In this document: positions 1,856 to 25,114 of the stretch, piece by piece
Layout: each line of letters opens with the position of its first letter
How positions within the stretch are numbered: position 1 is the first letter of the stretch
Assembly (NCBI GenBank): GCA_977020255.1
Contig: CDROCS010000253.1
Location: 372,001 to 436,000 of the forward strand
DNA: 64,000 nt
Reading direction: 5' to 3'
DNA from: Obrimoposthia wandeli
Taxonomy: Eukaryota
Position numbers and translations under genes: made by a program
Notes under the pieces: model-generated
Told to the model about the DNA's origin: nothing
Database searches by the model: none
What the model saw: the letters and a program-made list of their open reading frames with translations, nothing else

Positions 1856-3103
1856 CTATTTAATACAAATAGATAGATAGAGATTCGAAATAGTGTGACC
1901 ATCTGTTATGCGCCACACGGAGGCGAGCCACATATCGTATATTATCGCTTTTTTGCTTTCAGCTATCCAATATTTTTCCTCTGCTAGGCCTAAAGTGTTT
2001 CCAAAACTTTTCAAATCAGCAGGAATATCATTTTCAGCAATGATTCTAGAGTATGTGCTACTGCAATAGTTAGTAGCGTCCACTTGATTTTTTGCATCAT
2101 TAACAACGATGTAACATGTACCTCCAATGTCAGTACCTGAACAGCTGGTATCTTTTGTGAAGGCTACCGATGAAGACAAAATTTCCCCTGCCTTATTATT
2201 ACTAGCTATTTCTTTAACACGTACCTGAACATAACCAGAGGCTATGTCAACATCACCAACATCAACTGGATTCGTTGTTGCGTCAACCCAATCAGCGCCA
2301 TTATTCACGCTATATTGATAATCTGACGCATTATCAAAGTCAGAAACATTAGTCCAAGCAAAGGTATCGGCGCTATCGTCAACCACACCATTAGTGGGGG
2401 CATCTGGTTTTTCTGATACATTAAAATCAATATCTGAAATAACAACTTCACCGGCTGGTGTTAGCTCAGTTTTGGCAACACGAATGACAATGCTGTCGGC
2501 GCTTGCCGCAATATTACCAATATTAATGATAAAGCTAGTCACAGCATGCCATGTGACGTCATTACCAGCTGCTACAAAGTTAGTGCTATATTGATAATCA
2601 CTTGCCTTGCTGAAGTTGGTAATCGCGCTAAAGCTTAGTGTATCACTGCTATCGTCACCTATAACATTGCTCGGTGCTTGTGGTTTTGCAACCGTAATAT
2701 AACGTGCCAGTGCCATACTACTATCAGTTACATCGGTCGCGGTATTACTAGTAAAGCCATAACGCTGCGCTTCATCGCTCTCAGTTACCTGATTTAACCA
2801 GTAACTTCCAACACTATCATCGATATTATGAAGCGGAAAGATTAGCTTATTTTCAATATTTAACTGTCCTTTAGGCATTTTTTCGGTGGTCAGTGGTGCT
2901 GAGGCCAAATTATAGCCTTCATACCCCCAGCCTGTACCTTTAACACTCCAAGTACCATCCTCATTTATCGCATGGAAGAAATAATTATTATCTTTCTGTT
3001 CACTGGTCCAATAACTGGGGGAATGACTCCAGTCATTTTTTGGCTGTTGGTGTAATCGACAGTCGCCAATGACTCTAGCAGGTTGACCGTAGGGATAGTC
3101 CAA
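1856..3103 (-). CDS. Open 3' fragment of the large surface protein (end of DUF1566-like domain, two Ig/FN3-like modules, lectin-like C-terminus)
   Basis: YWTS motif; modules APSNVIGDD...SDYQYS and APTNGVVDD...SDYQYS; C-terminal CSGTDIGGTCY...YC...YWI...ICIK; probably no genuine start of its own. Confidence 0.6.
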   Translation of the reverse strand: MDYPYGQPARVIGDCRLHQQPKNDWSHSPSYWTSEQKDNNYFFHAINEDGTWSVKGTGWGYEGYNLASAPLTTEKMPKGQLNIENKLIFPLHNIDDSVGSYWLNQVTESDEAQRYGFTSNTATDVTDSSMALARYITVAKPQAPSNVIGDDSSDTLSFSAITNFSKASDYQYSTNFVAAGNDVTWHAVTSFIINIGNIAASADSIVIRVAKTELTPAGEVVISDIDFNVSEKPDAPTNGVVDDSADTFAWTNVSDFDNASDYQYSVNNGADWVDATTNPVDVGDVDIASGYVQVRVKEIASNNKAGEILSSSVAFTKDTSCSGTDIGGTCYIVVNDAKNQVDATNYCSSTYSRIIAENDIPADLKSFGNTLGLAEEKYWIAESKKAIIYDMWLASVWRITDGHTISNLYLSICIK

Positions 3104-4637
3104 TCATTAAAGCCACAAATAACCGTCACTTTTGAAGCAAGCTGCCATGGTGCGCTAAACCGCCAGTTGAGTGGGGTAGTAGTCTTTGTAGCCGTGCCGG
3201 AATACCTTGCTTTGCAGCCGTTTGCCATAGGCGTTTGTTCCATTAGCGACCAAATACGACTTTTACCTTCGTGTCTAAGGTCAGCAACACAGCGCCACCC
3301 TTGTAGATATGTGGCACTCGTTGGCATGTAATGACCCGCTAAATCAAGTTTGGCAAAGTGTGTACCTACCATGGCATCTGCAACGGTGGTAACAAATTTT
3401 GACACTATTATAATGTGCTTTAAGATCGCCATTACTCGTGCCATTTGCTAGTGGGAAGGTGACTTTATCTTGCGTTAACCTGTGACCATTTTGCAATAAC
3501 GCCCATATAGTGCGCGTTTTTAGCCAAAGCGTCACTGGTGCAGACAACGCCAGCCCTAGGCTTTCTGACTTAGTTGACTATTGGCTTGAGTATTAAGTCC
3601 ACTTTTTGGCATACCAAGCGTGTTGCTCAATGTTGCGTTAGCTTGCTCTGTGCCACCTAGGGCATTTATCACAACCGCTAATGGCAGTGATTTACCTATG
3701 TCATCGAGTCGTGTTTTTTGACCCGATAACGCCGTAATAACATCGCTAACAGCGGTTTTATCCGCAGCAGTTTCTTGTCTTACTGGCTAATGCTGCATCA
3801 AGCGAGGCTTTTAACCGTAAAGAACTTTTGTGCCACATATCGTTCCGTTAATTGCTTGAAGTCGCTAACTGCTTGCTCACGCATTTTTTTACTAGCCAGT
3901 TCGCTATTTGCATTGTCGTAAGCGGTGATTGCATCAGCAGATTGCGCAGCTTGTAATTGCGTGTATTTGCTTTCATTGCTGGCAACTAGACCGGCAACAC
4001 GACCATTTTCAGCATTGGCTTTAACCCGTAATTTCACACCACCAATGGCAATATCAAAATTACCAACAAGCAAAGGCTTACTAGTAACAACTTGATAACT
4101 ACCACCATTAATACTGTATTCGTAATCACTTACTTTGTAGTGCTAGCAATCAGCTGTGCATTAACCAATAATTCCCCCGCATTTAAACTTGTTTGACTAC
4201 TGGCTAAGTTATTATTAATCGCCACATAATCATTAACATCGTAGTTAATGTCATCGTTAAACGAGCAGTAGTACTGGCAGCTTGGTTTGGTTTGATCTTC
4301 TGTAACTTGGCTAAAGGCTAGCATCATTATAACCGGGTATTGCCACCTTAAAATCATATTTTCTGATTTGAGGCTCACTAACTGTGGTGCTACCAGGAAT
4401 AGCAATGGTTAATGCTTGATGAAATGGTGACGATAGACTTGCTGCATTATCGATGCCAGCTTTTACCCGTACATAAAGGCCCGTATTTGCCTCTAGTGCA
4501 ATATTACCGAGTACAATAGGCTTCGCATCGACATTCTTCCACTCACGATTATCAAAACTATATTCATACATTTCTACTTGCTCAACCAGTAAGTTGGTGT
4601 GGCGGCATTGTGGTCAATTAAGCAGCTTGTGTCTGGT

Positions 4638-6506
4638 TTATTCCAATTGCCATAAACATTTAAAGCTTGAGTTGTGCGCTGCTGTGTAAGCAACATCATT
4701 AAACATAATCGCCATCTGGCTCTGATGCCCATTTTTGGCAACACGCACGCCAACTTGACCAATAGCAAAGTCATCGTTACCGACGTTAATAACTATAGAA
4801 TTGGCGTACTTCATCGAAGACCAAGTAGAGCCAGTATTGGTAGTATACTCATAATATTCAGCTAGTTTAAAATCAGCTAATGGCGTAAAAGTAAAAGTAT
4901 TCTTTTTGTCGTCAATAACAGGTTTTGTTGGTGCTAATGGCGCTACTGGAATTGGCTTAACAAATGCTTCTTGGTTACTCAGTGCTATACCTGCGCTATT
5001 GCCCACTTCAGGGTTACTAATAACTCTAACTTGTACTTGATTTATCGCATAAGTTTTTTCTGCTAAGACGATTGGGTTAACACTAACTGTTTGCCAAGTG
5101 TTACCTGTATCGCTTGAGTATTGGTAGTTAGTCAATTCGCTAAAAGTTGTAACTAAGTCAAAACCAAAGCTACTACTAGTACTAACACCACCATTAGCAA
5201 TCACACCATTACTTGGCGCACTAGGTTGTAATAAATAGGCGCTATCATTCACTAATATTGCCCCGGCATTACGGTCTATTTGATCATCTGCTTTAACTCG
5301 AACTTGTACTGTGCCCGCTAGATAATGCTGATTTGTCAAAATCAGTGGGTTAGTCGCAGCATCCTGCCAGTTAGTACCCTTATCTGTGGAGTATTGGTAA
5401 TCACTCACGTTGTTATAGCCAGTCACAAGAGTCCAACCAAAGGTATTAGCACTATCATCAATAACAGCATTTGTTGGCGCTGCTGGATCTGGTGTTACCG
5501 GATCTGGTGTTACCGGATCTGGTGTTACCGGATCTGGTGTTACCGGATCTGGTGTTACCGGATCTGGTGTTACCGGATCTGGTGTTACCGGATCTGGTGT
5601 TACCGGATCTGGCGTTACCGGATCTGGTGTTACCGGATCTGGCGTAACTGGATCTGGCTTAACTGGCTCAGGAATAATTACAGGGGTAATTTCACCGTTA
5701 TCTATTTCGCTTTTTGAAACAATTAAGCTAGGCGTGGTTTTTAAAAATAGCGCAGCTAGTGTGCTTGTCTCGCCACCCGTGCTGATAGCGTCATCTACTT
5801 GCTCACTAACTTGTTCTACCGGAAAGTTAGCTAACTTATCGGTAAATAATTTTGCTACTTGCGGCTTTTCTTCATCGCTAGTATTCGTTGCAGACTGTGC
5901 TAAACCTTGGGCAATAATATCAGTAACTACTTGGGAAAAAAGGTGAATCTTACTGTATTCTTGTTTTTGTTCTACCGTTAAAGTAGTGTCATTTTTTGCC
6001 GCGACAAAATCACTATAGAGCATGCTACTATCAGTTAAACCTAGTTGTTGCACTAGCGCTTGCTCAGCTTTGGTACTGTCTCCTAGCATTGTTGTTTTAG
6101 CATAAACTAAGGTAGTTAGCGGTGAAACCACCTCAGGTTTTTTATAATCACTTAATAGGTAATAGGCTTGGCTGATGGTTTGATCAGGATGATCGCTATC
6201 TATGGTAATACCTGCTGAAGTGGTCACTAATAATGGCACTTTAACATCTAACCCCTCGGGAGCAACTATTTCAAAACGCCCCTCTTTATCAGTAACTACT
6301 TGGTATTCACTCTCGCCATCACACTGAAAATTACTATTTAAATCTATACAAGCTTTTGCCATGGCTAAATAACCATCGACGGCAACACCAGATATTTTTT
6401 GAGTTTTTGCTACGGGAGCAGGTTCTGTTTTATTGTCAGATCCACAGCCAGTTAAGCCTAATAATAAAGGCGACAGTGCCAGTAATTGAGGGCTGATAAG
6501 TTTCAT
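4638..6506 (-). CDS. Open 5' part of the large surface lipoprotein (lipobox, CxDxNxNxxC domain, PDPVT linker, three Ig/FN3-like modules)
   Basis: MKLISPQLLALSPLLLGLTG-C lipobox with AAGGAAG RBS; GVAVDGYL..AKACIDLNSNFQCD...SPLTTLV; three ~85-aa repeats. Confidence 0.8.
   Translation of the reverse strand: MKLISPQLLALSPLLLGLTGCGSDNKTEPAPVAKTQKISGVAVDGYLAMAKACIDLNSNFQCDGESEYQVVTDKEGRFEIVAPEGLDVKVPLLVTTSAGITIDSDHPDQTISQAYYLLSDYKKPEVVSPLTTLVYAKTTMLGDSTKAEQALVQQLGLTDSSMLYSDFVAAKNDTTLTVEQKQEYSKIHLFSQVVTDIIAQGLAQSATNTSDEEKPQVAKLFTDKLANFPVEQVSEQVDDAISTGGETSTLAALFLKTTPSLIVSKSEIDNGEITPVIIPEPVKPDPVTPDPVTPDPVTPDPVTPDPVTPDPVTPDPVTPDPVTPDPVTPDPVTPDPVTPDPAAPTNAVIDDSANTFGWTLVTGYNNVSDYQYSTDKGTNWQDAATNPLILTNQHYLAGTVQVRVKADDQIDRNAGAILVNDSAYLLQPSAPSNGVIANGGVSTSSSFGFDLVTTFSELTNYQYSSDTGNTWQTVSVNPIVLAEKTYAINQVQVRVISNPEVGNSAGIALSNQEAFVKPIPVAPLAPTKPVIDDKKNTFTFTPLADFKLAEYYEYTTNTGSTWSSMKYANSIVINVGNDDFAIGQVGVRVAKNGHQSQMAIMFNDVAYTAAHNSSFKCLWQLE
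5485..5664 (-). repeat. 15-bp coding tandem repeat, 12 units, encoding a (PDPVT)n linker
   Basis: Plus-strand unit GGATCTGGTGTTACC repeated, with degenerate units at 5605, 5635 and 5650. Confidence 0.97.
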
Positions 6507-6617
6507 GATTTTACTTCCTTTATTAACCAAATATACCTAACCCTACATTGCTTTAAGCTCTTTAATTAATAAAAGAATGACTCAGCTAATCGTTAAGTAC
6601 CTATAAAAAATACGCCG

Positions 6618-6643
6618 TAATTATAATGCGAATCATTTTCGTT
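6618..6643 (-). promoter_or_regulatory. Fur-box-like operator overlapping a TATAAT -10 element of the large lipoprotein gene
   Basis: AATGCGAATCATTTTCGTT (6625-6643) matches AATGAGAATnATTnTCATT at 15/17 defined positions; minus-strand TATAAT at 6620-6625. Confidence 0.65.
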
Positions 6644-6937: not shown

Positions 6938-6966
6938 CCAATAAAAAACCGACGCTAAGTCGGTTT
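6938..6966 (-). terminator. Intrinsic terminator of the tad-apbE operon
   Basis: AAACCGAC-loop-GTCGGTTT followed by a U-tract on the minus strand. Confidence 0.8.
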
Positions 6967-7001
6967 ATCAGTTATTTAACTCGCTTGTCATAAACTGCCA
7001 G

Positions 7002-7826
7002 CTAAAAAACAAAGTGCCAATATATACCAGCATGGCGTGCATCAAGCTCAACCTCACCCGTTACCGTATCCAATATCTGTTGTGAGTCAGCAATACTGGT
7101 CGTCATATTAGCTTTATAGTCTATAAATACTGCACGTAATTCTACTTTACTGTGCCATTGTGGTAATTGATAAACTATTGAAGCGAGATAACCAGTCGCA
7201 TTACTAAAGTCAGCCTGTGAATTTATGACTAAACTTTCATCTGTGCGTGCTTGTCCTGAGATAAGTTCTTGTGCAGAAGGTATTAAGGCATCTGAAAACT
7301 CATTAAAAACCCTGAGTTCAGTATCTTCATCACTGCGAGCTGGCTTGACCAATAACGACGCTGATTGATCTGCCAACTTAAGGCTGAAATGACTTACTAA
7401 CCCCAAACCAAGCTGTAAATTATCACTTAATTGGTAATAAGGAATAAGCTCTACTTCGACACGCGTAAATTTCATATCTGGATCGCTAATACGATCCCAG
7501 TGATAGCCACCATTAAGCTGCACACTAAAGCGTTCATTGACTTTATAGTTTGCGCCTACCCCAAATACAGCAAAGCCACCCGTCTTAATTTTTTCACTGT
7601 AATCAACCGCTGTGACTTGCTCACCATCTCGACTATAAGTCACGTTAGTATTACCTAGCGCAAGCGTATCCCCTCCATTAGTTATGCCACCAAAAATGGA
7701 CCAAGATAGCTCACCTTGCCTTTGATGAACTTGGGCTTGAGCCAAGTTTGAACTGGCAAGTGTTAATCCTAAAGTAATAACAAAGACTAAGGGGGCTAAA
7801 ATAAACCCTGTTTGCTTATTTTTCAT
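7002..7826 (-). CDS. Outer-membrane beta-barrel protein, unknown function
   Basis: Signal peptide (..LAQA), alternating amphipathic strands, C-terminal GIYWHFVF; ATGA overlap with apbE. Confidence 0.7.
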   Translation of the reverse strand: MKNKQTGFILAPLVFVITLGLTLASSNLAQAQVHQRQGELSWSIFGGITNGGDTLALGNTNVTYSRDGEQVTAVDYSEKIKTGGFAVFGVGANYKVNERFSVQLNGGYHWDRISDPDMKFTRVEVELIPYYQLSDNLQLGLGLVSHFSLKLADQSASLLVKPARSDEDTELRVFNEFSDALIPSAQELISGQARTDESLVINSQADFSNATGYLASIVYQLPQWHSKVELRAVFIDYKANMTTSIADSQQILDTVTGEVELDARHAGIYWHFVF

Positions 7827-8776
7827 TGAATGACTTCCTTTTGGCTGTTGTTGATGCAGCCACTTTTAGATAAATATGCAGTATCTTGATGAAAATTAAG
7901 CGCATCATCAATAAAGATTGCTTTAATATTTTGTTGGGCAAAACTGCCATTTAATAGACTGGGTTTGATACTCAATGCGGTACTAAAAATACCACTGGTA
8001 AGTACGCTTTTACTTAACACAGAAACCGATAACACTTGTTGAGCAATACCTTGTTCAGAAAGAATATGCGAACCTCGCTCTTTGCCATAATTAAACTGCC
8101 GATGATAATGACCTGAGCTAGCTAAAGCTTGATCAGATAAAGCAATACTGCCACAAATATTATCCGCAACTTTTGGATGTTGGATAGCTACTCGAAAGAC
8201 ACTATTGTCCGGCTTGTTACCCCAAGAAATAATGTCGCCACCAAAGTTAATCAAACCGGCACTTATGCCTTTTTTTTTACATAGCGCCATCGCCAGATCA
8301 ACACTGTATTCTTTAACTACACCGCCCAGATCAAACTGAGTATTACTGTCATTAAAGTGCAAAAAGTTACCACTGATTGCCCAACTATCTAAACCCATCG
8401 CTCGCTGATATTTTTTAAATAGTTGCGATTTAGTTAACTGCGGCATTTGCAGTGCCATTTTTTTAATGGTGCCAACACAAATATCAAAAGTCCCTTGAGT
8501 TGCTTTTGACAATTCTCGCACCCGAGTAAGAATAGCTAAGCTTTCTGGCTCAAGGTGAACCTGCGATAAGGCTCGGTTATTTACCTCTCGATTTAACCAA
8601 GAGCTTTGCTGATAAAAATTATATTTATGCTCTAAAGCTAAAGTTTGTGCTTGCACACGTTCAGCCACTTCATTGGCATGTTCCGCGTTATCTGCCACTA
8701 ACAACAGCTCACAGTTAACCGTCATAGCACAAAACTGCCGACTATAAATGCGAGCTTGATCTGAATGACTAGCCAT
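7823..8776 (-). CDS. apbE: FAD:protein FMN transferase (ApbE family), no signal peptide
   Basis: FCAMT, FDICVG, DLGGVVKEY, INFGGDI, ALASSGHY, HI motifs. Confidence 0.9.
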   Translation of the reverse strand: MASHSDQARIYSRQFCAMTVNCELLLVADNAEHANEVAERVQAQTLALEHKYNFYQQSSWLNREVNNRALSQVHLEPESLAILTRVRELSKATQGTFDICVGTIKKMALQMPQLTKSQLFKKYQRAMGLDSWAISGNFLHFNDSNTQFDLGGVVKEYSVDLAMALCKKKGISAGLINFGGDIISWGNKPDNSVFRVAIQHPKVADNICGSIALSDQALASSGHYHRQFNYGKERGSHILSEQGIAQQVLSVSVLSKSVLTSGIFSTALSIKPSLLNGSFAQQNIKAIFIDDALNFHQDTAYLSKSGCINNSQKEVIQ

Positions 8777-8783
8777 TTTGACA

Positions 8784-10007
8784 CTAGAAACGATAATTCA
8801 CTCCTAGCACCGCCCAACTTGCCGCAAATTGGTTTGTTTGTTCGTAGCGATTAACCGCGAAATCAAGTTGCCATTCATTAGTCACTTGGTAGCTGATAGT
8901 TAAACCATAAGTGTCTGCAGAGAAACTACCTAAGCGAGTATCATTGCTACCATCACCACTGGCCATAAAGTATGGCTTTTCAACATTAGGATTAAGATAA
9001 AATGTAGCTTGGCTTTGTTCGTAGCGAATATATTCCGGGATGATAAATAAGCCATCAAACACTTCAAAACTGAAACTAGCACTCGTGGTATGAGAGCTTA
9101 TATTCCAGTTATCTTGATAATAGCGGTAGCTAAACTGACCGGTAAGCCATGGCCAGAATTGTGCTGAATAACTTAATTTAGTACCAAAACCATTACGAAT
9201 ATCAGGTCTACTATCAGCGGATAAAAAGTACTCATCATCCGTAATGGTATTGTCTTCGTTAATATCAATACCACGTAAAATGGTGAGGTAATGATTACTC
9301 AAGTAACCATTATCATGATTAAAGAATAACTTCATATCAAAAACACTGGTTGGTGATAAGACTTGAGTCAGCCCAGTTTCAAAATTTATCACTTGGATTT
9401 TTTCTTCAGTTCGGCTTTGATAACCCGTACCAAAAACTAAGGTTTCATCATTTAAGTAAGCAAAACCAATATTAACTGAGCGGTTTTTTCCCTTATCTAA
9501 AAACAATAAATATGACGCCGAAACACTGCTACTTTTATAGTCACTTTCTTTTGAATGGGCGACACCAATAGTCCATTCATTACGATAAACATCACGTATT
9601 GTTAGCGCGGCGGCGGCTGATTTTCTGGTATCTTCTAATGGCACTCTTTGTATTTGATAGCGGCTAACATCGTAGGCATAACCTAATAATGTTTCCTCTG
9701 TCATCGCTTGCCCTTGCTGAAGCTCATCTTGACGAAAAATAACCTCTGCATTAGAAACGCCTCCAGAGTTAGCTATTTGCCAAGTCGGTGATGCGCCAGT
9801 AACAGAGTCATAACCAAGTGATAAGTCCAAACTATAATCAACACCAAAATCTACTGTTAAGGCTAATGATGTGTCTGCAACCTTAATACGGTCGTCATCT
9901 TCTTGGTATTGCATTTGATGCAAAGACACTGTTTGTTCTGCTTGAGCTAGCCCTGAGCAAATGGCTGTACAGCCAAGTAAACTAATTTTAATTTTTTTAT
10001 TCATCAT
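8784..10007 (-). CDS. DUF3570-family outer-membrane beta-barrel with flavinylation motif DSVTGAS
   Basis: Signal peptide MMNKKIKISLLGCTAICSGLAQA; YQEDDDRIKV, YDSVTGAS, HSKESDY, YRYYQDNWNISSHT; terminal YRF; context with apbE/DUF4266/TlpA. Confidence 0.8.
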   Translation of the reverse strand: MMNKKIKISLLGCTAICSGLAQAEQTVSLHQMQYQEDDDRIKVADTSLALTVDFGVDYSLDLSLGYDSVTGASPTWQIANSGGVSNAEVIFRQDELQQGQAMTEETLLGYAYDVSRYQIQRVPLEDTRKSAAAALTIRDVYRNEWTIGVAHSKESDYKSSSVSASYLLFLDKGKNRSVNIGFAYLNDETLVFGTGYQSRTEEKIQVINFETGLTQVLSPTSVFDMKLFFNHDNGYLSNHYLTILRGIDINEDNTITDDEYFLSADSRPDIRNGFGTKLSYSAQFWPWLTGQFSYRYYQDNWNISSHTTSASFSFEVFDGLFIIPEYIRYEQSQATFYLNPNVEKPYFMASGDGSNDTRLGSFSADTYGLTISYQVTNEWQLDFAVNRYEQTNQFAASWAVLGVNYRF

Positions 10008-10038: not shown

Positions 10039-10641
10039 TTATTTACAACCACACCCCCCGCCTGCAATACCGTCGCCGCCTAAAGTGGCTGCTTTTGAAA
10101 TATATATTTTACTAGCGAATTTTTTCATCTCTGGTGCGACACCACCAGGTAACATAGCGGGTTCAGCTAATTTTTCTTTTTGCCACGGTTTTACTTCTTT
10201 CTCGATAAACCAACTGTCAATCCAAGTAAAACCTTTATTTAACCACTGACCTGCTGGGCTGACGGAAGGTGGGGCTTTTTGAGTAATAGGCGCAAGTGTC
10301 AATAAGGGAGTATCCTGCTTAACTTGCCCTATTTTATCTACCTGATTATTTACCTTGTTATTCTGCTGACTTTTGGCAGCCACTTTCCCCTGTTCAATAC
10401 TAGTTTCACCACTCGCTTCAATAGAAGCTGGCTGCATTGATCCACTAGCACGTCCTTTAGTTTTGTATCTTTTCACTACGTGGGTATTACTAACCACTTG
10501 CTCATTGACCTGAGCGAATACAAGCTCTTCACCTTGCCTCTCATTATTACTAACATCTACTGCTTTATTATCAGCTGCCATAACAAAAGTAGGTGAAAGC
10601 ACAAGAGCACTTATTAAGACTAAATAGTGTGTCTTGTTCAC
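10039..10641 (-). CDS. DUF4266-domain protein with long N-terminal extension
   Basis: C-terminal VKPWQKEKLAEPAM...GGDGIAGGGCGCK; GTG start overlaps the tlpA stop (GTGA). Confidence 0.8.
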   Translation of the reverse strand: MNKTHYLVLISALVLSPTFVMAADNKAVDVSNNERQGEELVFAQVNEQVVSNTHVVKRYKTKGRASGSMQPASIEASGETSIEQGKVAAKSQQNNKVNNQVDKIGQVKQDTPLLTLAPITQKAPPSVSPAGQWLNKGFTWIDSWFIEKEVKPWQKEKLAEPAMLPGGVAPEMKKFASKIYISKAATLGGDGIAGGGCGCK

Positions 10642-11186
10642 TTTAACGCTCCTAATTGAGTTAAATCTTGCTTTATCACTGCACCAATATTAGCAATGGC
10701 ACCCAACCTGATTCCTAATACTTTATTGTGTTGGATATAATACAAGGCAGGCATACCAATGGGTTCAAAAGTACTGATAACTTGCTGCTTTTGATCATCA
10801 ATAACGCGAAAAGATAATGAGATTTCTTTTAAAAATTTTGCCCCAACTTCTGAGTCTTCATCAACTTGTATACCAACAAACTCAACGTTATCACCACTTA
10901 ATTCTTGGGATAAATGATCAACTTCAGGCAGCTCTATACGACATGAAACACACCACGAAGCAAAAAAATCAACCAGACTAATTTTGTCAGGGTCAAGTGC
11001 CAACTTAGCGACTAGTTCATCGGGTAAACTATCACCTCGCTGTAATGCTTGTGCGGTACCTGTCAGAGCGAATAACAAAAGTAAACTAAACAGCACAGCT
11101 AGAGCACCATTAAAAATTTTATGCGTTCGATACTGGAAAAAATATCGCTGTGAAGAAAAATATAATGTGTTCATTTGGAGCCTCAT
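10638..11186 (-). CDS. Exported TlpA/ResA-like thioredoxin
   Basis: LVDFFASWCVSCRIELP (CxxC), GMPALY; signal ending AQA; TAATG overlap with tadG. Confidence 0.88.
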   Translation of the reverse strand: MRLQMNTLYFSSQRYFFQYRTHKIFNGALAVLFSLLLLFALTGTAQALQRGDSLPDELVAKLALDPDKISLVDFFASWCVSCRIELPEVDHLSQELSGDNVEFVGIQVDEDSEVGAKFLKEISLSFRVIDDQKQQVISTFEPIGMPALYYIQHNKVLGIRLGAIANIGAVIKQDLTQLGALK

Positions 11187-13131: not shown

Positions 13132-13605
13132 TTAATGCTTAGGCTCATGTTTCACCAAAATATCCGCACTAAAGGGAAACATATTTTGTAACCAAGGACT
13201 GAGTAAAGTCACCTGATAAGACACTTTATATTTAGCCAACAAGCCATTTTTATCTACGGCATTATTGTTTGTATCTTGGTTAGCAAGTTGTGTTGGTGAG
13301 CTATAAAAACTTGCCTGTTCAACGACAAGTTTACTGCTATCTAATAGTGAGCTTGGATTAGCAGTCATTGCATTGAGCAGTTGGCTTTGATAATTAGCGC
13401 CCGATGCAGAAGATAACTTGACCTTTCGAGCGGCTTCGCTCACAACATGATTCAGACTGGCATAGATAATAAGCCCGCGTGATAACTCTAATGCACTAAA
13501 GACAATAAACAAAAATATCGGCAGCACCAAAGCAATCTCCATTATCATGCTACCCCGTTGTTTTTGTTTACCACATGGAAAATATCTAATACTCGTGTTA
13601 ACCAA
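13132..13605 (-). CDS. tadE: TadE-like pseudopilin
   Basis: QRG-SMIMEIALVLPIFLFIVFSALE. Confidence 0.85.
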   Translation of the reverse strand: MVNTSIRYFPCGKQKQRGSMIMEIALVLPIFLFIVFSALELSRGLIIYASLNHVVSEAARKVKLSSASGANYQSQLLNAMTANPSSLLDSSKLVVEQASFYSSPTQLANQDTNNNAVDKNGLLAKYKVSYQVTLLSPWLQNMFPFSADILVKHEPKH

Positions 13606-15357: not shown

Positions 15358-16290
15358 TTACTCATCAACTTTACTCATTTTAGCGATAATATAAAGCCCT
15401 AAAATTATGCTAAGAGTTGAATACGTTGCAATTATTTGACCTCGTTCGTCATAAAGCAAATAGTCAAAAATATATTTGGCTTGGTACCAAAAAAGCAGTA
15501 AGAATAAAGGCGGCATTATCGCGATAATTTTTGCTGAGGTACGCGGTTCAGCGGTCATTGCTAAAACCTTTTGTTGCAAGGCTTTACGCTGATGTAAGTT
15601 TTCCATCAATTGCCGTAATATTTGTGACAACTGGCCGCCGGCATGTTGATTTAACAGTAAGGTCACGGTAAAAAATTTAAAGCTGGCAAGTTTTATCCGC
15701 AAAGTAGCATCTTGCAATGCTTGCTCTAATGAAAGACCTATGGCTAACAAGTTATTAATACGGGTAAAAGTATCACCTACTGGGCCAGCCATTTCTTCAC
15801 TCACATGAGCAATAGCCGCGGGTACTGATACACCTGCACTTACCGCTCGGCTAATACTGGCAATTGCCGTAGGGAAATCAGCTTCAAAATGCTGTAGTTG
15901 ACGTCGTTGCAACCAACGAACAACCGATATACTTATAACAATGTAAAAACAGATAAGCACTATTACCTGCCAATAAGCCGGTAATTTCAAAGTACTCCAC
16001 CATAAAATAGGTAGTAACAAGGCCGCAAAAATCCCCAAACGCCACGCCAGTTTTACTGGCACCACAGTTACTAACCGTTGTTGACGAACAAATAACCACA
16101 GTCGCCAGCCATGGTGCTGACCATTTTTATTAAATAATAATAACGCAGTACTGCCTCTTGACTTTAATGGTGCTAAATCAAGATAACGGTTAATACGGAT
16201 TGAATGTAAGCGCTGATTTTTTTGGTATTTAAACCAATAAAAAGCACTTACGATGGCTAAAGTAATTAGAATAAACAACAACGGAATCAT
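15358..16290 (-). CDS. tadB: TadB inner-membrane platform protein
   Basis: FPTAIASISRAVSAG, HAGGQLSQIL, AMTAEPRTSA. Confidence 0.9.
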   Translation of the reverse strand: MIPLLFILITLAIVSAFYWFKYQKNQRLHSIRINRYLDLAPLKSRGSTALLLFNKNGQHHGWRLWLFVRQQRLVTVVPVKLAWRLGIFAALLLPILWWSTLKLPAYWQVIVLICFYIVISISVVRWLQRRQLQHFEADFPTAIASISRAVSAGVSVPAAIAHVSEEMAGPVGDTFTRINNLLAIGLSLEQALQDATLRIKLASFKFFTVTLLLNQHAGGQLSQILRQLMENLHQRKALQQKVLAMTAEPRTSAKIIAIMPPLFLLLFWYQAKYIFDYLLYDERGQIIATYSTLSIILGLYIIAKMSKVDE

Positions 16291-17738
16291 GATAATTCCA
16301 GTGACTTTAACAGTTGTTCATCAAGGCCATAATAGCGAACTTTATCGAGACAATAAGGCTGTGTTTTATGACTAATAAATTCACCCGCTAACTCACCACT
16401 GGTTAATTCTCGACTGTATTTATAACTAAATAAGTCTTGTACTAATAAGTTTTCACCTTCAATACCAACCAACTCACAAATACTGGTTATACGCCTTTTA
16501 CCATCACGCATACGTTCAATCTGCATCACAATATCAATGGCTGAATTCATCTGTCTTTTTAGCGCTATCGGCGGTAAATTAACTTGCCCCATCAGTAACA
16601 TATTCTCTAATCGAATTAATGCGTCACGGGCAGAGTTAGCATGCAGGGTAGACATTGAGCCATCATGGCCGGTATTCATTGCTTGCATCATTTCAAAGGC
16701 TTCTTCACCACGCACTTCACCGATAATGATACGATCTGGTCGCATCCGTAGCGCATTTTTTAGCAAGTCTCTCAATGATACTTCTGCCCCGCCCTCTAAA
16801 CTAGCCGGACGGCTTTCGAGTGTTACCACATGAGCTTGTTGTAATTTGAGTTCAGCCGCATCTTCTATAGTCACAATACGTTCTTGTTCATCAATTTGAT
16901 AAGACAAGGCATTTAGCAGCGTAGTTTTACCGGCACCTGTGCCGCCAGAGACTAAGATATTAAGCCGGCAATGACTGGCAATTTTCAAGAAATTGACCAT
17001 GCCGTTAGACATCGCACCTTTGTCTGCTAGGTCTTGTAACTGCAAACCCATGGTCGAAAATTTTCGGATTGAGATGCTAGTGCCAGATAAACTTAATGGC
17101 GGAATAACAATATTGACACGACTGCCATCGGCTAATCTGGCATCGACCATAGGTTTACTTTCATCGATACGACGACCAACCGCCGAGGCGATACGACGCG
17201 CGACATGTAATAAATGGTTTTCATCTCGAAATCTGGCGTTAGTCAGTACTAACTTACCACTACGCTCAACATAAACTTTGTCAAAACCATTGATCAAAAT
17301 ATCATTAACACTGTCATCATCAAGCAAAGACTGTAGCGGGCCTAAACCCAGCATATCTGCCAATAATAACTGAGCTATTTGCTGCTGCGCTTGATAAGTT
17401 AATGGCAAACGTTGCTGATTAGCGATAGTGCTTACCGCTTGTAATATGCGTTCGGCAAGTTCGTCTTGCTTTAATTTGGTCGCTACTGAGGGATCAATAC
17501 TGGCAAAAATCTGCTCACGGATCACTTGATATACTTGCGTATCTACTTCAACAGTCGACTGACTATTATCATGATGATTTATTTGAACATCTTGCTTTAA
17601 AGTAATCGGTAAATCTTGACTACTGAGTGGCAATGGATCCGTTGATAAAACAGAATCTACTATAGGCTTTATTGCCGACTGCTCATTGCTTAGTAAAGCT
17701 GGCTGGTTATTAGGTTGACTAACCTTACGACCAAACAT
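16287..17738 (-). CDS. tadA: TadA/CpaF pilus assembly ATPase
   Basis: Walker A GGTGAGKT, TIEDAAEL, LRMRPDRIIIGEVRG, MNTGHDGSMSTLHAN. Confidence 0.95.
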   Translation of the reverse strand: MFGRKVSQPNNQPALLSNEQSAIKPIVDSVLSTDPLPLSSQDLPITLKQDVQINHHDNSQSTVEVDTQVYQVIREQIFASIDPSVATKLKQDELAERILQAVSTIANQQRLPLTYQAQQQIAQLLLADMLGLGPLQSLLDDDSVNDILINGFDKVYVERSGKLVLTNARFRDENHLLHVARRIASAVGRRIDESKPMVDARLADGSRVNIVIPPLSLSGTSISIRKFSTMGLQLQDLADKGAMSNGMVNFLKIASHCRLNILVSGGTGAGKTTLLNALSYQIDEQERIVTIEDAAELKLQQAHVVTLESRPASLEGGAEVSLRDLLKNALRMRPDRIIIGEVRGEEAFEMMQAMNTGHDGSMSTLHANSARDALIRLENMLLMGQVNLPPIALKRQMNSAIDIVMQIERMRDGKRRITSICELVGIEGENLLVQDLFSYKYSRELTSGELAGEFISHKTQPYCLDKVRYYGLDEQLLKSLELS

Positions 17739-21128: not shown

Positions 21129-21129
21129 A

Positions 21130-22029: not shown

Positions 22030-22056
22030 CGAAACCAGCACTCCTAAAATATGTAA

Positions 22057-22548
22057 TTAAGTTAAAACAAGGGCCGCGCCAAGTGAGATAGCTATGCCAT
22101 AGGGAACTGTAATAATTGCTTTTTTATTACCTTGATAACGAGGGCTGAGTAAATTTAAACAAGAGTTATAACTGATGATTAATAACGCTATCAAACCGCC
22201 TATTAAGGTTGTTAATAACAAAAAAGTCTTAAGTTGTTCAAATTCAAACCAAACAGAAAGCGCTGCAATAAGTTTAATATCTCCGGCTGCCAAACCACCT
22301 AAGTGGTAAACAGGTATTGCCGCTAACATAAGTAATAGCGCCGTTAATATTCGTAGCCCTAATTCGTAAGACGAACCGCTAATGTCTTCTTGTTGTTGTA
22401 ATAGCAAAGTAAACACTGCACTTAGCAGCACTAGTAAAGACAAAGAATTAGGTAATTGGCGAAAACGCCAGTCCAAATAAATAGCGCTAACTAATAACAC
22501 GGCTAACAAGTAATTAAGGCCGATTAAAAACACAGTATTAGTTAACAT
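22057..22548 (-). CDS. tadV: TadV/CpaA prepilin peptidase (A24)
   Basis: LDWRFRQLPN, GGLAAGDIKL, VPYGIAI. Confidence 0.9.
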   Translation of the reverse strand: MLTNTVFLIGLNYLLAVLLVSAIYLDWRFRQLPNSLSLLVLLSAVFTLLLQQQEDISGSSYELGLRILTALLLMLAAIPVYHLGGLAAGDIKLIAALSVWFEFEQLKTFLLLTTLIGGLIALLIISYNSCLNLLSPRYQGNKKAIITVPYGIAISLGAALVLT

Positions 22549-22588
22549 TACTGAGCGTCATCCTTTCAACATCAGGTATTGATAACGA

Positions 22589-22789
22589 TTACTCTGCGGC
22601 AGTAAGTTCAGTAATTTTGGTTTTAATCGTTTCAAAAGTTTGCTCTATGATAGAGCTTAAACCTTCATCACCACCAAATGCTGACACCAACAAACCAACA
22701 ATAATGGCTGCTAATACGGAATATTCAATGGCAGAAACGCCACGCTGGTCTTGTAGAAAAGCTTTAAAATAATGATAAATGGGTAACAT
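22589..22789 (-). CDS. flp: Flp type IVb/c pilin
   Basis: FLQDQRG-VSAIEYSVLAAII Flp motif; 66 aa. Confidence 0.95.
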   Translation of the reverse strand: MLPIYHYFKAFLQDQRGVSAIEYSVLAAIIVGLLVSAFGGDEGLSSIIEQTFETIKTKITELTAAE

Positions 22790-22875
22790 GATGATTCACT
22801 GGGTTAATTAATGTTAATAAAATATTAATAAATGTTAATTTTTCGGTATCTTACCTAGAGAAAAACCATAATGCA

Positions 22876-22912
22876 AACAATAACTATTATCATTATAATT
22901 ATTGATCTCATT
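22876..22912. promoter_or_regulatory. Fur-box-like operator in the divergent flp / lipoprotein promoter
   Basis: AATAACTATTATCATTATA (22879-22897) matches GATAATGAT(A/T)ATCATTATC at 15/19; ATTATAAT (22892-22899) supplies TATAAT on both strands. Confidence 0.65.
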
Positions 22913-22966
22913 ACCATCTAATGTAATAATTTACTAATACCCCCACTCGTAGTAGATCAATTTTTC

Positions 22967-25114
22967 ATGCCCTTCAAATACTTTTTTTTAGTTAATATTA
23001 TTATGGTAAGTCTGCTGTTTGGCTGTAACTCTGACAATAATGACGCTTTTATTCCTAAATATGAGCAAGCAAAATACAGCGCAAATAAGTTCAGCTGCAT
23101 TGATAGCAATTTAAATGGTGACTGTAATGTTGGTGAAGCCGATTTATTAGCAAGTAAACAAGATTTGTTCTTAAATCAAAGCCCTGTTCTTGCTGTTTAC
23201 GATAACTTCACCCTTTCTGCTGTTGCTGGAAGTTCATTAATAACACCATTTACCACCTTAATTAATAATGAGGTTATGCATAACCCATTGGTGAGTGGCA
23301 GCATAGAGCAGGCTAAGTTTTATCTAAGTGAAAAGCTCTCTCTAGATTTTAGTAAGCTAGATAAATTTGATGGACCCGTCAGAGAAGGCAATCAAATAAT
23401 TGCCTCAATTATTAAAGCTCAAACAATTACTGCTGATAACCGTTACCTGCCAATTGCAGCCATGGTTGATTTGATGATTTACAGTAATAACTTGGACGTG
23501 CAAACGTTACAGATTCATGCTGATGCTTTAATTTATCCAGGTTTAGTGACAGGTAACTCTTATTTACTTGATGAAGATAGTAATGTCAGGTTTAGTCGAT
23601 TTGATTTACACCCAGTTACAGGACGAGCCATTATCGTTACCAGTAATAATCAATTGATTAGCTTAAACGCTAATAGTGGTGCTTATGCCAACATTGATAA
23701 TCAGGCTAAAAACCAAAAAACAGCACTCAGTTATAGAACAAAAAAAAATCAGAAAAAGTCTATTTCTAACGCCTACCGCAATCTAAATATTGCTACACCG
23801 AGAGATGGTGATGACGACGACGATGATGACGACGACGACGATGATGATGATTATAATGACTGGTTTGATTATTTGAATCAAACACGCAGCTCGGATATCA
23901 AGAATATAAAGCAGCATATTAATAGTAATAATTTCTTTATACTGACTAGTCAAGAAGCATCAACTATCACTGATGTATGTAATCCAAGTGGTGAATACGG
24001 TTTATTTTTATCAAATGTTCAACCTAATAATGAAAGTGATGTCCAAACAAAAGTAACCAATAGCAGGAAAATGACACTAAGTTATATTGATGGATTCACT
24101 TCGGCATCAACATCAACCCCGGTAATAGACAAACCTACCGTGATCCCACCTATTTTTGATAGTGAAGCCAGTTGTTATAATGATGCCATGATTACCATGG
24201 CAAGTAGCATAGACAGTAAGTTATTAGCGGTAGTACTTAATGATGGCTTAGGACATATTATTTATCGTCTTTCCGGTGAAAGTCTCACACCAACCCCTGA
24301 CTTTGGTTATAGAGTGCCTGACTTTATAACACTTGATCATATTGCTTTATCGACCAACGGCGAGTTACTGGCTTATACCGAACCAGAAAGCGGTAAATTA
24401 TCACTTATTGACACTAATAATATGAAGCTATTGGCAAGCTATCAACACGATAATAAGAAGCTCAGTCAAGTTCACTTTAGTGATGATAAGCAACTTGTTG
24501 CTATCAATACTGACCAAGAAGAACTCACTTTTATTGATATTATTGATAATCAACTCATTTTAAATAAAAGTTTGAAACTTGATTTTTCGCCAAGTGCTTT
24601 AAGTAGTAACCCCATAGCTAAAATAACGGTTGTGGCAAATGAAAAAAATATCAGTTTAGTTAAAGAAAATAATACTGACTTTACCGTTAAGCCAATGATA
24701 ACCGACTTTGATAACACCATAGAGCAAGTTGCAGTACTCTCTGATAAAGTAGTTTACACTACTGGTGAAGCATATCTTTCTGGTGCTGATACCATTAATT
24801 ATTTAAGCACAAACAGTATTATTGGCTCACCGCTTAGAGCGGCACAGCAATTTTTGACTGCTGGCATATTGATGGAAAATAGATCGGGTGTTTATTATCG
24901 CACTGGCTCCTTTTATTTACCCAAAAACCTGGATGAACATGGCATTAAAGGTATCACCATCGAGTGGTCAAGTAACCGCGGTGAAGAAATAAACTTAGAC
25001 AGTGGTGAAATTAACACTAGCTTCTATGAAGGTAGCTTGTTGTTGAGTGCAAAAATTCGCGGCGACTTCCGTTTCGAGCCAGCCACTATCACGAAAGTTT
25101 TTAAGGTAAATTAA
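22967..25114 (+). CDS. Surface lipoprotein: CxDxNxNxxC N-domain, poly-Asp tract, DGFTSAS motif, probable beta-propeller, C-terminal Ig-like domain
   Basis: LLFG-C lipobox; CIDSNLNGDC...ITPFTTLI; D14; C-terminal LPKN...GITIEWSS...SGEIN...LLSAKI...TKVFKV. Confidence 0.8.
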   Translation: MPFKYFFLVNIIMVSLLFGCNSDNNDAFIPKYEQAKYSANKFSCIDSNLNGDCNVGEADLLASKQDLFLNQSPVLAVYDNFTLSAVAGSSLITPFTTLINNEVMHNPLVSGSIEQAKFYLSEKLSLDFSKLDKFDGPVREGNQIIASIIKAQTITADNRYLPIAAMVDLMIYSNNLDVQTLQIHADALIYPGLVTGNSYLLDEDSNVRFSRFDLHPVTGRAIIVTSNNQLISLNANSGAYANIDNQAKNQKTALSYRTKKNQKKSISNAYRNLNIATPRDGDDDDDDDDDDDDDDYNDWFDYLNQTRSSDIKNIKQHINSNNFFILTSQEASTITDVCNPSGEYGLFLSNVQPNNESDVQTKVTNSRKMTLSYIDGFTSASTSTPVIDKPTVIPPIFDSEASCYNDAMITMASSIDSKLLAVVLNDGLGHIIYRLSGESLTPTPDFGYRVPDFITLDHIALSTNGELLAYTEPESGKLSLIDTNNMKLLASYQHDNKKLSQVHFSDDKQLVAINTDQEELTFIDIIDNQLILNKSLKLDFSPSALSSNPIAKITVVANEKNISLVKENNTDFTVKPMITDFDNTIEQVAVLSDKVVYTTGEAYLSGADTINYLSTNSIIGSPLRAAQQFLTAGILMENRSGVYYRTGSFYLPKNLDEHGIKGITIEWSSNRGEEINLDSGEINTSFYEGSLLLSAKIRGDFRFEPATITKVFKVN
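23810..23851 (+). repeat. GAY trinucleotide run encoding 14 consecutive Asp
   Basis: Mixed GAT/GAC codons. Confidence 0.95.

What the first reader, a model, noticed from the sequence alone, without database searches (positions are those of the whole stretch)
1856..25114. Candidate undescribed system: Fur-boxed Tad pilus operon fused to an ApbE flavinylation module and flanked by two related surface lipoproteins
Seen: 18 same-strand genes (flp, tadV, cpaB, rcpA, cpaD, tadZ, tadA-G, tlpA, DUF4266, DUF3570, apbE, beta-barrel) run from 22789 to 7002. Most junctions overlap or are <45 bp, including TAATG coupling of tadG to tlpA and GTGA coupling of tlpA to DUF4266, and I see one terminator only (6938-6966). 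Both ends carry a lipoprotein gene with the same N-terminal domain and a Fur-box-like promoter. Known: Tad loci build adhesive Flp pili. ApbE covalently attaches FMN to Thr/Ser in [ST]GA[ST]-type motifs. As I recall, apbE-DUF3570-DUF4266-thioredoxin clusters are reported as stand-alone flavinylation modules, not as part of a pilus operon. Inference: an iron-starvation-induced apparatus in which the pilus and adhesins attach the cell to particles or Fe(III) minerals while a flavinylated outer-membrane barrel and surface lipoprotein perform surface redox, such as reductive iron assimilation. Alternatively, the redox module matures pilus-associated or adhesin components.
Basis: partly seen in the sequence, partly recalled or inferred. 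Interest (0 to 1): 0.9.

Follow-up and report, generated by a model that had tools for sequence, protein, structure and literature searches.

The report
Tad pilus operon with flavin-relay genes
A Colwellia adhesive-pilus (Tad) operon runs straight into five genes of a known thiol-to-flavin electron relay, and the same arrangement is kept in about 50 marine species including Vibrio, which puts a relay of unknown function into a testable setting.

Summary
The gene list is right. Eighteen same-strand genes run from flp to a small barrel gene. Thirteen are Tad genes; then come thioredoxin, DUF4266, DUF3570, ApbE and the barrel, with one clear terminator.

The redox block is the DsbD-type DUF3570 flavinylation system of Méheust et al. 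2021, so it is not new. That paper does not mention pili, and nine literature searches found no report of the link to Tad.

The link is not unique to this genome. In 49 of 53 related loci from six gammaproteobacterial families, Tad genes lie directly upstream on the same strand. Forty of these loci add dsbD after apbE. The DUF3570 tree places the fusion as one clade, and the TadA tree agrees.

Two lipoprotein genes travel with the locus: a beta-propeller lipoprotein and a giant Lcl_C adhesin. In this window the adhesin is inverted and decayed. The two share only a lipobox and a short Cys-bracketed loop.

Fur-like boxes match 15/19 here and 16/19 in Vibrio, and they recur at these promoters in five genera.

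A second flavinylation site in the propeller lipoprotein is not conserved.

Co-transcription, iron control and function remain untested. I rate this a new variant of known kinds.

The parts
22967..25114 (+). 715-aa lipoprotein (lipobox LLFGC). It has an N-terminal Cys-bracketed Asp/Asn loop, a poly-Asp run and a C-terminal beta-propeller-like part. It is divergent from flp.
   Evidence: Weak WD40/beta-propeller Pfam hits. 73% orthologue divergent from flp in C. psychrerythraea. Homologues beside the locus in Vibrio, Moritella, Pseudoalteromonas and Oleispira. A homologue lies between DUF3570 and apbE in a stand-alone cluster (E 2e-8).
22879..22897 (.). Fur-like box, 15/19 on one strand and 14/19 on the other, in the 177-bp flp | lipoprotein divergent region.
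   Evidence: 8/2000 shuffles reach it. Related boxes sit at the orthologous promoters.
22589..22789 (-). flp prepilin
   Evidence: PF04964, E 1.1e-8
22057..22548 (-). tadV prepilin peptidase
   Evidence: PF01478
21130..22041 (-). rcpC/cpaB
   Evidence: PF16976
19689..21161 (-). rcpA secretin
   Evidence: PF00263 and PF13629
19045..19692 (-). cpaD lipoprotein
   Evidence: PF09476; TIGR02522
17738..19045 (-). tadZ (ParA/MinD-like)
16287..17738 (-). tadA secretion ATPase
   Evidence: PF00437, E 7.6e-66
15358..16290 (-). tadB
   Evidence: PF00482
14446..15351 (-). tadC
   Evidence: PF00482
13598..14446 (-). tadD (TPR)
13132..13605 (-). tadE pseudopilin
   Evidence: PF07811
12480..13148 (-). tadF pseudopilin
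   Evidence: PF16964
11186..12568 (-). tadG-like gene (vWA-type in orthologues); 4-6 conserved Cys
   Evidence: No Pfam hit here. Orthologue cluster of 49. VWA_2 hit in V. coralliilyticus. Cys conservation.
10638..11186 (-). TlpA/ResA-like thioredoxin with signal/anchor and invariant CVSC
10039..10641 (-). DUF4266 protein: signal peptide, linker of about 120 aa, C-terminal GGGCGCK
   Evidence: PF14086; sequence; invariant CxC. It is 154-216 aa in the Tad-fused clade and 68-76 aa in stand-alone clusters.
8784..10004 (-). DUF3570, predicted 16-strand outer-membrane barrel. The ApbE target motif DSVTGASP is at residues 66-73 counted from the Met at 10004. An EF-hand-like loop DINEDNTITDDE is also present.
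   Evidence: PF12094, E 3.5e-59. Motif present once in all 54 clade members. AF2 pLDDT 87.9. Foldseek matches to outer-membrane barrels. The family is shown to be flavinylated in C. luteolum (PMC8238504).
7823..8776 (-). ApbE (FAD:protein FMN transferase) without a signal peptide
   Evidence: PF02424; NF007774 aligned from profile position 48. Leaderless in all orthologues and in stand-alone clusters.
7002..7826 (-). 274-aa secreted protein, probably a small outer-membrane beta-barrel. It occupies the position that dsbD has in Vibrio.
   Evidence: Weak OMP Pfam hits. Signal peptide and C-terminal ...HFVF. AF2 gives beta strands but low confidence, pLDDT 60. Found only in Colwellia and Pseudoalteromonas loci.
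6946..6966 (-). Intrinsic terminator-like hairpin plus T-run after the last gene
6622..6640 (.). Fur-like box (15/19), about 115 bp upstream of the adhesin start codon
   Evidence: A near-identical box sits at the same distance upstream of the intact orthologue in two other Colwellia.
4638..6506 (-). 5' piece of the giant adhesin lipoprotein gene: lipobox LTGC, Cys loop, (PDPVT)n linker, repeated Ig-like modules. It ends at an in-frame stop.
   Evidence: 71% identical to residues 1-586 of the 1,549-aa C. psychrerythraea protein.
1856..4637 (-). Decayed remainder of the same adhesin gene, in at least three other frames. The Lcl_C-like part is at 3025-3396.
   Evidence: tblastn frame map; ORF list; Lcl_C in the intact orthologue

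Best explanation
This is the Colwellia copy of a conserved composite locus of marine Gammaproteobacteria that arose once.

Layout. A complete Tad/Flp pilus operon (flp to tadG) continues, with overlapping or nearly touching reading frames, into the already described DsbD-type thiol-to-flavin relay. The relay has four core parts: a TlpA-like thioredoxin, a long-linker DUF4266 protein ending in CxC, the DUF3570 outer-membrane barrel that bears the ApbE target motif, and a leaderless ApbE. dsbD follows in Vibrio, Photobacterium, Moritella and Marinobacterium. A small barrel gene follows instead in Colwellia and Pseudoalteromonas. Two lipoprotein genes travel with the locus and carry Fur-like operators: a beta-propeller lipoprotein and a giant Lcl_C adhesin, which is decayed in this window.

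Proposed working (inferred). Low iron derepresses the locus, and the pilus and adhesin hold the cell on a surface. ApbE flavinylates pre-DUF3570 in the cytoplasm. After export, electrons flow from cytoplasmic thioredoxin through DsbD to the periplasmic thioredoxin, then to the DUF4266 CxC, then to FMN on a loop at the outer end of barrel strand 3. This gives a haem-free route to the cell surface. The most likely use is reduction of a surface or external substrate, with Fe(III) as the leading candidate.

Shown here: gene content, conserved order, single origin, motif conservation and recurrence of the box. Inferred: co-transcription, Fur control, direction of electron flow and the substrate.
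For: Gene content.

Conserved order. The run rcpA...tadG-trx-DUF4266-DUF3570-apbE, all on one strand, is present in 49 of 53 loci from Colwelliaceae, Pseudoalteromonadaceae, Vibrionaceae, Moritellaceae, Oceanospirillaceae and Spongiibacteraceae. dsbD follows in 40 of them.

Junctions. trx>DUF4266 overlaps by 4 nt in essentially all loci, and apbE>dsbD does so in 38/40.

History. The fused DUF3570s form one clade (SH-aLRT 88), with Oleispira and Iodobacter as sisters and stand-alone clusters outside. The TadA tree gives the same groupings.

Linkage survives rearrangement. There are four layouts of propeller, adhesin, tad and relay, in Vibrio/Moritella, Colwellia, Pseudoalteromonas and Oleispira.

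Fur-like boxes. 15/19 twice in the window, the same box upstream of the adhesin in two other Colwellia, 16/19 in two Vibrio, 15/19 in P. denitrificans, and boxes upstream of trx and of the propeller gene in two Oleispira. The background is 0.21 sites per 10 kb over 1.24 Mb.

Published precedents. V. vulnificus flp-1 rises about 131-fold under iron limitation (PMC6748444). DUF3570 is flavinylated by its ApbE when co-expressed in E. coli from a construct lacking the signal peptide (PMC8238504).

Other support. The barrel model is confident. The locus has no CxxCH haem motif.
Against: No expression data. The public runs that hold this DNA gave only fragmentary contigs of unknown library type.

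The fusion has a single origin, so conservation could partly be inheritance rather than repeated selection.

The tadG>trx gap is the loosest junction (median 44 bp, up to 199 bp), so an internal promoter is possible in some lineages.

The Fur-like boxes are 14-16/19 in AT-rich DNA, and no binding was tested. P. denitrificans flp itself has none.

This window has no dsbD, so the electron source here is assumed to lie elsewhere in the genome.

The side of the membrane on which the FMN site lies is deduced from strand counting, not from coordinates.

The loci were found through DUF3570 peptide patterns, one genome per species, so Tad loci without the relay were not counted.
Confidence: 0.6

Rival explanations
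1. The relay is a dedicated maturation or proof-reading system for cysteine-bearing exported parts of the adhesion apparatus: TadG, CpaD, TadF and the Cys-loop lipoproteins. It would keep or reshuffle their disulfides in the periplasm or at the outer membrane, with the flavin acting as a thiol/disulfide mediator.
For: DsbD-to-TlpA-type pathways classically reduce periplasmic client proteins (established knowledge). TadG has 4-6 conserved Cys, CpaD has 2 besides its lipobox, and TadF has 1-2. Both lipoproteins have an invariant Cys-x9-Cys loop. The relay genes sit directly after the minor-pilin/TadG genes.
Against: Stand-alone relay clusters exist without any Tad genes, so the core job does not depend on a pilus. 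A plain disulfide reductase needs neither an outer-membrane barrel nor a flavin. Whether Tad loci without the relay lack these cysteines was not compared.
Confidence: 0.25
2. The adjacency is historical only. An ancestral insertion of the relay behind tadG has been inherited or transferred en bloc, and the two parts work independently.
For: The fusion has a single origin. The Tad and relay trees are congruent, as hitch-hiking would also predict. The tadG>trx gap is variable.
Against: The order is kept at 35-40% protein identity across six families while the flanks are rearranged in four ways. In Oleispira the relay has moved to the other side yet stays beside the same lipoprotein and tad genes. 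The relay proteins changed with the fusion: DUF4266 gained a long linker, and DUF3570 has an EF-hand-like loop in 50/54 clade members that the three unfused sister sequences lack.
Confidence: 0.1
3. One reading: the 715-aa lipoprotein is a second ApbE substrate (DGFTSAS) and forms the flavinylated surface end of the chain.
For: The motif is kept in C. psychrerythraea (DGYTSAS) and partly in Moritella (YSSAS). A homologue lies between DUF3570 and apbE in a distant cluster.
Against: The position reads GGAS in V. coralliilyticus, SSRS in V. splendidus and LTNN/LTAN in Oleispira, and no homologue has a canonical [ST]GA[ST] there. ApbE is leaderless, so a folded lipoprotein would not meet it after export.
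Confidence: 0.07

Closest known systems
DsbD-type DUF3570 flavinylation system (Méheust et al. 2021, eLife, PMC8238504)
   Same: Same gene set: ApbE, DUF3570 with an [S/T]GA[S/T] motif, a thioredoxin-like protein and DUF4266 with C-terminal CxC. DsbD is in the cluster in Vibrio, Photobacterium and Moritella orthologues. The paper also counts 316 clusters without DsbD, as in this window.
   Different: Here the system is the 3' end of a Tad pilus operon and is accompanied by two lipoprotein genes with Fur-like boxes. There is one motif per DUF3570; the C. luteolum protein has two. DUF4266 is 154-216 aa with a long linker and a non-lipoprotein signal peptide, against about 70-aa lipoproteins elsewhere. 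An EF-hand-like loop is present in 50 of the 54 clade members, and the three unfused sister sequences lack it. The paper does not mention pili.
Tad/Flp (type IVc) pilus loci, e.g. Aggregatibacter tad, Caulobacter cpa, Vibrio vulnificus tad1-3
   Same: Full canonical set: flp, tadV, rcpC, rcpA, cpaD, tadZ, tadA-G. Iron-limitation induction of a Vibrio tad locus is published (PMC6748444).
   Different: As far as I know, and as far as nine literature searches show, canonical loci end at tadG and carry no redox genes. V. vulnificus did not appear among the DUF3570 hits, so its tad1 probably lacks the relay.
MtrCAB porin-cytochrome conduit of Shewanella (from my own knowledge; works-like comparison only)
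   Same: The proposed logic is the same: a periplasmic carrier, an outer-membrane barrel holding a redox cofactor, and a surface lipoprotein partner.
   Different: There is no haem motif anywhere in the locus. The cofactor would be one covalently bound FMN fed by thiols. There is no sequence relationship.
Listeria flavin-based extracellular electron transfer, FmnB/PplA (from my own knowledge; works-like comparison only)
   Same: An ApbE-type enzyme flavinylates a surface-facing protein that can pass electrons to external acceptors, including ferric iron.
   Different: That system is Gram-positive, fed by quinone/NADH dehydrogenase, and has no outer-membrane barrel, no thiol relay and no pilus.

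Membership tests
Tad/Flp pilus locus | Flp prepilin and dedicated A24 prepilin peptidase | tested here: met
   PF04964 and PF01478
Tad/Flp pilus locus | RcpA secretin, RcpC/CpaB and CpaD | tested here: met
   PF00263/PF13629, PF16976 and PF09476
Tad/Flp pilus locus | TadZ, TadA ATPase and TadB/TadC platform | tested here: met
   ParA-like hit, PF00437 and two PF00482
Tad/Flp pilus locus | Pseudopilins TadE and TadF, and TadG | tested here: inconclusive
   TadE and TadF are met. The TadG-position protein has no Pfam or NCBIfam hit here, though its orthologues hit VWA_2.
DsbD-type DUF3570 flavinylation system | ApbE gene in the cluster | tested here: met
   PF02424, E 1.7e-42
DsbD-type DUF3570 flavinylation system | DUF3570 protein with a conserved [S/T]GA[S/T] motif | tested here: met
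   PF12094. DSVTGASP is invariant in its G-A-[ST]-P core across 54 sequences.
DsbD-type DUF3570 flavinylation system | Thioredoxin-like protein with CxxC | tested here: met
   PF13905/PF00085 with invariant CVSC. The paper cites PF13899, which is a different thioredoxin-like model.
DsbD-type DUF3570 flavinylation system | DUF4266 with C-terminal CxC | tested here: met
   PF14086...GGGCGCK
DsbD-type DUF3570 flavinylation system | DsbD encoded in the cluster | tested here: not met
   No DsbD anywhere in the 64-kb window. It is present after apbE in 40 orthologous loci. The paper also recognises 316 clusters without DsbD.
DsbD-type DUF3570 flavinylation system | Covalent FMN on DUF3570 | not testable with these tools
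   Shown only for the C. luteolum protein (PMC8238504)
Fur regulon | Fur box in the promoter | tested here: inconclusive
   Best matches are 15/19, with none at 3 or fewer mismatches. They are rare in shuffles and recur at orthologous promoters in five genera.
Fur regulon | Fur binding and iron-dependent expression | not testable with these tools
   No usable RNA data
Porin-cytochrome (Mtr-type) conduit | Multihaem cytochromes (CxxCH motifs) | tested here: not met
   No CxxCH in any protein of the locus

The most novel reading that the evidence does not exclude
The locus encodes a haem-free electron conduit across the outer membrane. It would consist of DsbD, a thioredoxin, a tethered CxC shuttle, an FMN-bearing 16-strand barrel and a docked beta-propeller lipoprotein. 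Under iron starvation it would be deployed together with a Tad pilus and a giant adhesin, so that the cell clamps onto particles and reductively releases Fe(III) at the contact site.
Probability: 0.2. Interest if true: 0.9.

Novelty: new variant of a known kind. Interest (0 to 1): 0.65.

Why it matters
[quoted passage not shown] Finding the whole relay welded to a Tad pilus operon, with two surface lipoproteins and Fur-like operators, gives that open question a concrete setting: surface attachment under low iron.

The setting is also tractable. The same locus is in Vibrio coralliilyticus, V. splendidus and V. crassostreae. The predictions are simple: one transcript, iron control, and a shared or separable mutant phenotype.

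For pilus biology it defines a Tad subfamily with five extra conserved genes that standard Tad descriptions do not include.

Tried and rejected
1. Public reads. The runs holding this DNA gave only short contigs from mixed strains, of unknown library type. They say nothing about co-transcription.

2. Strict Fur search. A search with 3 or fewer mismatches found nothing in the window. I therefore scored matches out of 19 and used shuffles and orthologous promoters instead.

3. Similarity of the two 'flanking lipoproteins'. 1856-3103 against 22967-25114 shows nothing. 4638-6530 against 22967-25114 shows only the N-terminal loop.

4. The DGFTSAS site as a second flavinylation site. Rejected on conservation.

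5. Supplementary table of PMC8238504. It is cut in the held copy, so it could not be searched for Tad Pfam families.

6. First profile for the search for related loci. It was too divergent and was redone with closer sequences.

7. Literature. Nine searches combining Tad/Flp with ApbE, DUF3570, DsbD, thioredoxin and Fur found no description of the link.

8. Atlas search of the 715-aa lipoprotein. It gave only unnamed Pseudomonadota families and weak NHL/SGL propeller resemblance.

9. Structure of the 274-aa protein. The model has low confidence (pLDDT 60). It is compatible with a small barrel but proves nothing.

Full report
**What is in the window**

On the minus strand, 18 ORFs run from 22789 to 7002. 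Pfam identifies them as flp, tadV, rcpC/cpaB, rcpA, cpaD, tadZ, tadA, tadB, tadC, tadD, tadE and tadF. Then come a thioredoxin/redoxin, DUF4266, DUF3570 and ApbE.

The gene in the tadG position has no family hit here. It belongs to an orthologue cluster of 49, and the Vibrio member of that cluster hits VWA_2.

The last gene encodes a 274-aa secreted protein with weak outer-membrane-barrel hits and a C-terminal Phe. Its model is beta-rich but of low confidence.

By coordinates the junctions are overlaps or short gaps:
- tadG/trx overlap by 1 nt, or leave 11 nt if trx starts at its fifth codon, as it is called in C. psychrerythraea.
- trx/DUF4266 overlap by 4 nt, and the 200-aa DUF4266 ORF has a proper signal peptide.
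- DUF3570 most likely starts at 10004, which leaves 34 nt after DUF4266.
- The only convincing intergenic terminator on this strand is 6966-6946.

The nearest relatives are Colwellia genomes, at 86-90% protein identity.

**What the redox block is**

It is the system that Méheust et al. (eLife 2021, PMC8238504) call the DsbD system: ApbE, DUF3570, a thioredoxin-like protein and DUF4266 with a C-terminal CxC. They found it with DsbD in 285 clusters and without it in 316.

They showed that Chlorobium luteolum DUF3570 is flavinylated by its ApbE at [S/T]GA[S/T] motifs. They state that the function is uncertain. The words pilus and Tad do not occur in the paper.

Every DUF3570 of the clade studied here has exactly one motif, D-[ST]-[VI]-[ST]-G-A-[ST]-P. 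The thioredoxin CxxC and the DUF4266 CxC are invariant.

**Is the link to Tad unique to this genome?**

No. A scan of one genome per species with a DUF3570 profile returned 53 loci. tblastn and ORF clustering gave the following:
- 49 loci have rcpA-cpaD-tadZ-tadA-tadB-tadC-tadD-tadE-tadF-tadG directly upstream of trx-DUF4266-DUF3570-apbE, on the same strand. Two of the remaining four are contigs too short to judge.
- The 49 come from Colwellia, Pseudoalteromonas, Marinobacterium, a BD1-7 clade bacterium, about 30 Vibrio species, Photobacterium, Moritella, Bacterioplanes and Bacterioplanoides.
- In 40 loci the next gene is a full three-domain DsbD. Colwellia and Pseudoalteromonas have the 274-aa protein at that position instead.

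trx>DUF4266 and apbE>dsbD overlap by 4 nt almost everywhere. tadG>trx is the loosest junction, with a median gap of 44 bp and a maximum of 199 bp. In V. splendidus the 84-bp gap holds no promoter-like or terminator-like site.

More distant DUF3570 clusters at 24-30% identity stand alone and have no Tad genes.

In a DUF3570 tree the Tad-fused sequences form one clade (SH-aLRT 88). Oleispira and Iodobacter are sisters, and stand-alone clusters lie outside. A TadA tree gives the same main groups, including Moritella placed next to Photobacterium inside the Vibrio group.

So the fusion happened once, and the two halves have travelled together since.

**The lipoprotein genes**

4638-6506 is the 5' piece of a giant adhesin lipoprotein. 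1856-4637 holds its remains in other frames with stops. The intact orthologue in C. psychrerythraea is 1,549 aa with an Lcl_C domain.

In the other Colwellia and in Pseudoalteromonas this gene converges on the operon. Here it is co-directional, so it has been inverted as well as broken.

The 715-aa protein at 22967-25114 is a lipoprotein with a beta-propeller-like C-terminal part. The two proteins share only the lipobox and a C-x-D-x-N-x-N-x-x-C loop.

Both genes are nevertheless faithful companions of the locus, in four layouts:
- Vibrio coralliilyticus, V. splendidus and Moritella: propeller (-) | adhesin (+) flp ... dsbD.
- C. psychrerythraea: propeller (-) | flp.
- P. denitrificans: both genes lie downstream of the barrel gene.
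- Oleispira: trx-DUF4266-DUF3570, then a lipoprotein (-), then propeller (+), adhesin (+) and flp-cpaB-rcpA.

In one stand-alone cluster a homologue of the propeller protein sits between DUF3570 and apbE (E 2e-8). The lipoproteins therefore look like older partners of the relay than the pilus is.

**Fur-like boxes**

Nothing in the window matches the 19-bp consensus with 3 or fewer mismatches. Together with one site at 43799 they are the best in the window. Shuffles of their regions reach that score in 8/2000 and 16/2000 trials.

Comparison with other genomes adds weight:
- The box upstream of the adhesin is almost identical, and at the same distance, in two other Colwellia.
- The propeller|adhesin region has a 16/19 palindrome in both Vibrio species examined.
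- P. denitrificans has a 15/19 site in its adhesin|propeller region.
- Both Oleispira genomes have a conserved Fur-like sequence just upstream of trx and another before the propeller gene.
- Over all 1.24 Mb of fetched loci, such sites occur 0.21 times per 10 kb.

Where flp is not next to a lipoprotein gene, as in P. denitrificans, its upstream region has no such box. The operator therefore belongs first to the lipoprotein and relay promoters.

A published precedent exists for iron control of a Vibrio tad locus. V. vulnificus flp-1 rises about 131-fold under iron limitation (PMC6748444).

**How it may work**

The DUF3570 model is a confident 16-strand barrel (pLDDT 87.9, pTM 0.83). It matches outer-membrane barrels such as BcsC and PelB only at the level of general fold.

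Counting strands from a periplasmic N-terminus puts the TGAS motif at the outer end of strand 3. That is the start of a 54-residue loop containing a helix. This placement is an inference, because I could not inspect coordinates.

ApbE has no signal peptide in any of the 49 orthologues, nor in the stand-alone clusters. This fits the published experiment, in which DUF3570 made without its signal peptide was flavinylated inside E. coli. Flavinylation before export is therefore the simplest reading.

The Tad-fused clade has its own changes:
- DUF4266 is 154-216 aa, with a plain signal peptide and a long linker. Elsewhere it is a lipoprotein of about 70 aa.
- DUF3570 has an EF-hand-like loop in 50 of the 54 clade members. 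The three unfused sister sequences (Oleispira, Iodobacter) lack it.

No haem motif exists in the locus.

I therefore favour a thiol-to-flavin route: cytoplasmic thioredoxin to DsbD, then to the periplasmic thioredoxin, then to the DUF4266 CxC, then to FMN on the barrel. It would be expressed with the attachment machinery when iron is low. Reduction of Fe(III) or another surface substrate is the most likely purpose.

The main rival is that the relay looks after the conserved cysteines of TadG, CpaD, TadF and the lipoprotein loops. Plain hitch-hiking is the least likely rival, given the rearranged flanks and the clade-specific changes in the relay proteins.

**What is not supported**

The suggested second ApbE site in the 715-aa lipoprotein is not conserved. 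No expression evidence could be obtained. The window has no dsbD.

**Limits**

- The loci were found through DUF3570 motifs, so Tad loci without the relay were not counted.
- The flanks were limited to 10 kb.
- Because the fusion has a single origin, the argument rests on retention, not on repeated invention.

**Verdict**

The relay is known, and so are Tad pili and their iron control. Their conserved fusion, the accompanying lipoproteins and the shared Fur-like operators do not appear in the literature I could search. I class it as a new variant of known kinds, of good but not exceptional interest.

Noticed in passing
window 1856-6530: The giant Lcl_C adhesin lipoprotein gene is intact (1,549 aa) in C. 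psychrerythraea. Here it is broken by stops and frame changes into at least five pieces. It is also inverted relative to all other Colwellia and Pseudoalteromonas loci, although its Fur-like box and promoter region are kept.
   Followed up: partly
window 9201-9236 (DUF3570 residues 268-279 of the long ORF): An EF-hand-like 12-residue loop (DINEDNTITDDE) lies in a predicted external loop. It is present in 50 of the 54 clade members and absent from the three unfused sister sequences (Oleispira, Iodobacter).
   Followed up: partly
window 10039-10641 and loci L058-L062: DUF4266 of the Tad-fused clade is 154-216 aa, with a non-lipoprotein signal peptide and a long low-complexity linker. In stand-alone clusters it is a 68-76-aa lipoprotein.
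   Followed up: partly
window 7823-8776; L054, L056, L057: ApbE lacks any signal peptide, both in the Tad-fused clade and in distant DUF3570 clusters. This implies flavinylation of the barrel precursor in the cytoplasm.
   Followed up: partly
window 23810-23870 (lipoprotein residues about 283-300): A run of about 17 aspartates is followed by YNDWFDYLN. A similar acidic run is kept in the C. psychrerythraea and Moritella homologues. It may be a cation-binding or mineral-binding stretch.
   Followed up: no
window 5470-5650: About twelve tandem PDPVT repeats form a linker in the adhesin's 5' piece.
   Followed up: no
L058 6835-6893: In V. coralliilyticus a hairpin followed by a T-run sits between the adhesin gene and flp. 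Read-through from the Fur-boxed adhesin promoter into tad may therefore be attenuated there.
   Followed up: no
L047/L048 8780-21113: In Oleispira the relay lacks apbE in the cluster and lies upstream of lipoprotein genes and flp-cpaB-rcpA. Bacterioplanes and Bacterioplanoides also lack apbE after DUF3570.
   Followed up: no
window 25310-29658: An alkaline phosphatase gene (-) and a TonB-dependent receptor gene (+) lie next to the locus. Their shared intergenic region has no Fur-like box (best 11/19).
   Followed up: partly
window 43799-43817: This is the only other 15/19 Fur-consensus match in the window. Its context was not examined.
   Followed up: no
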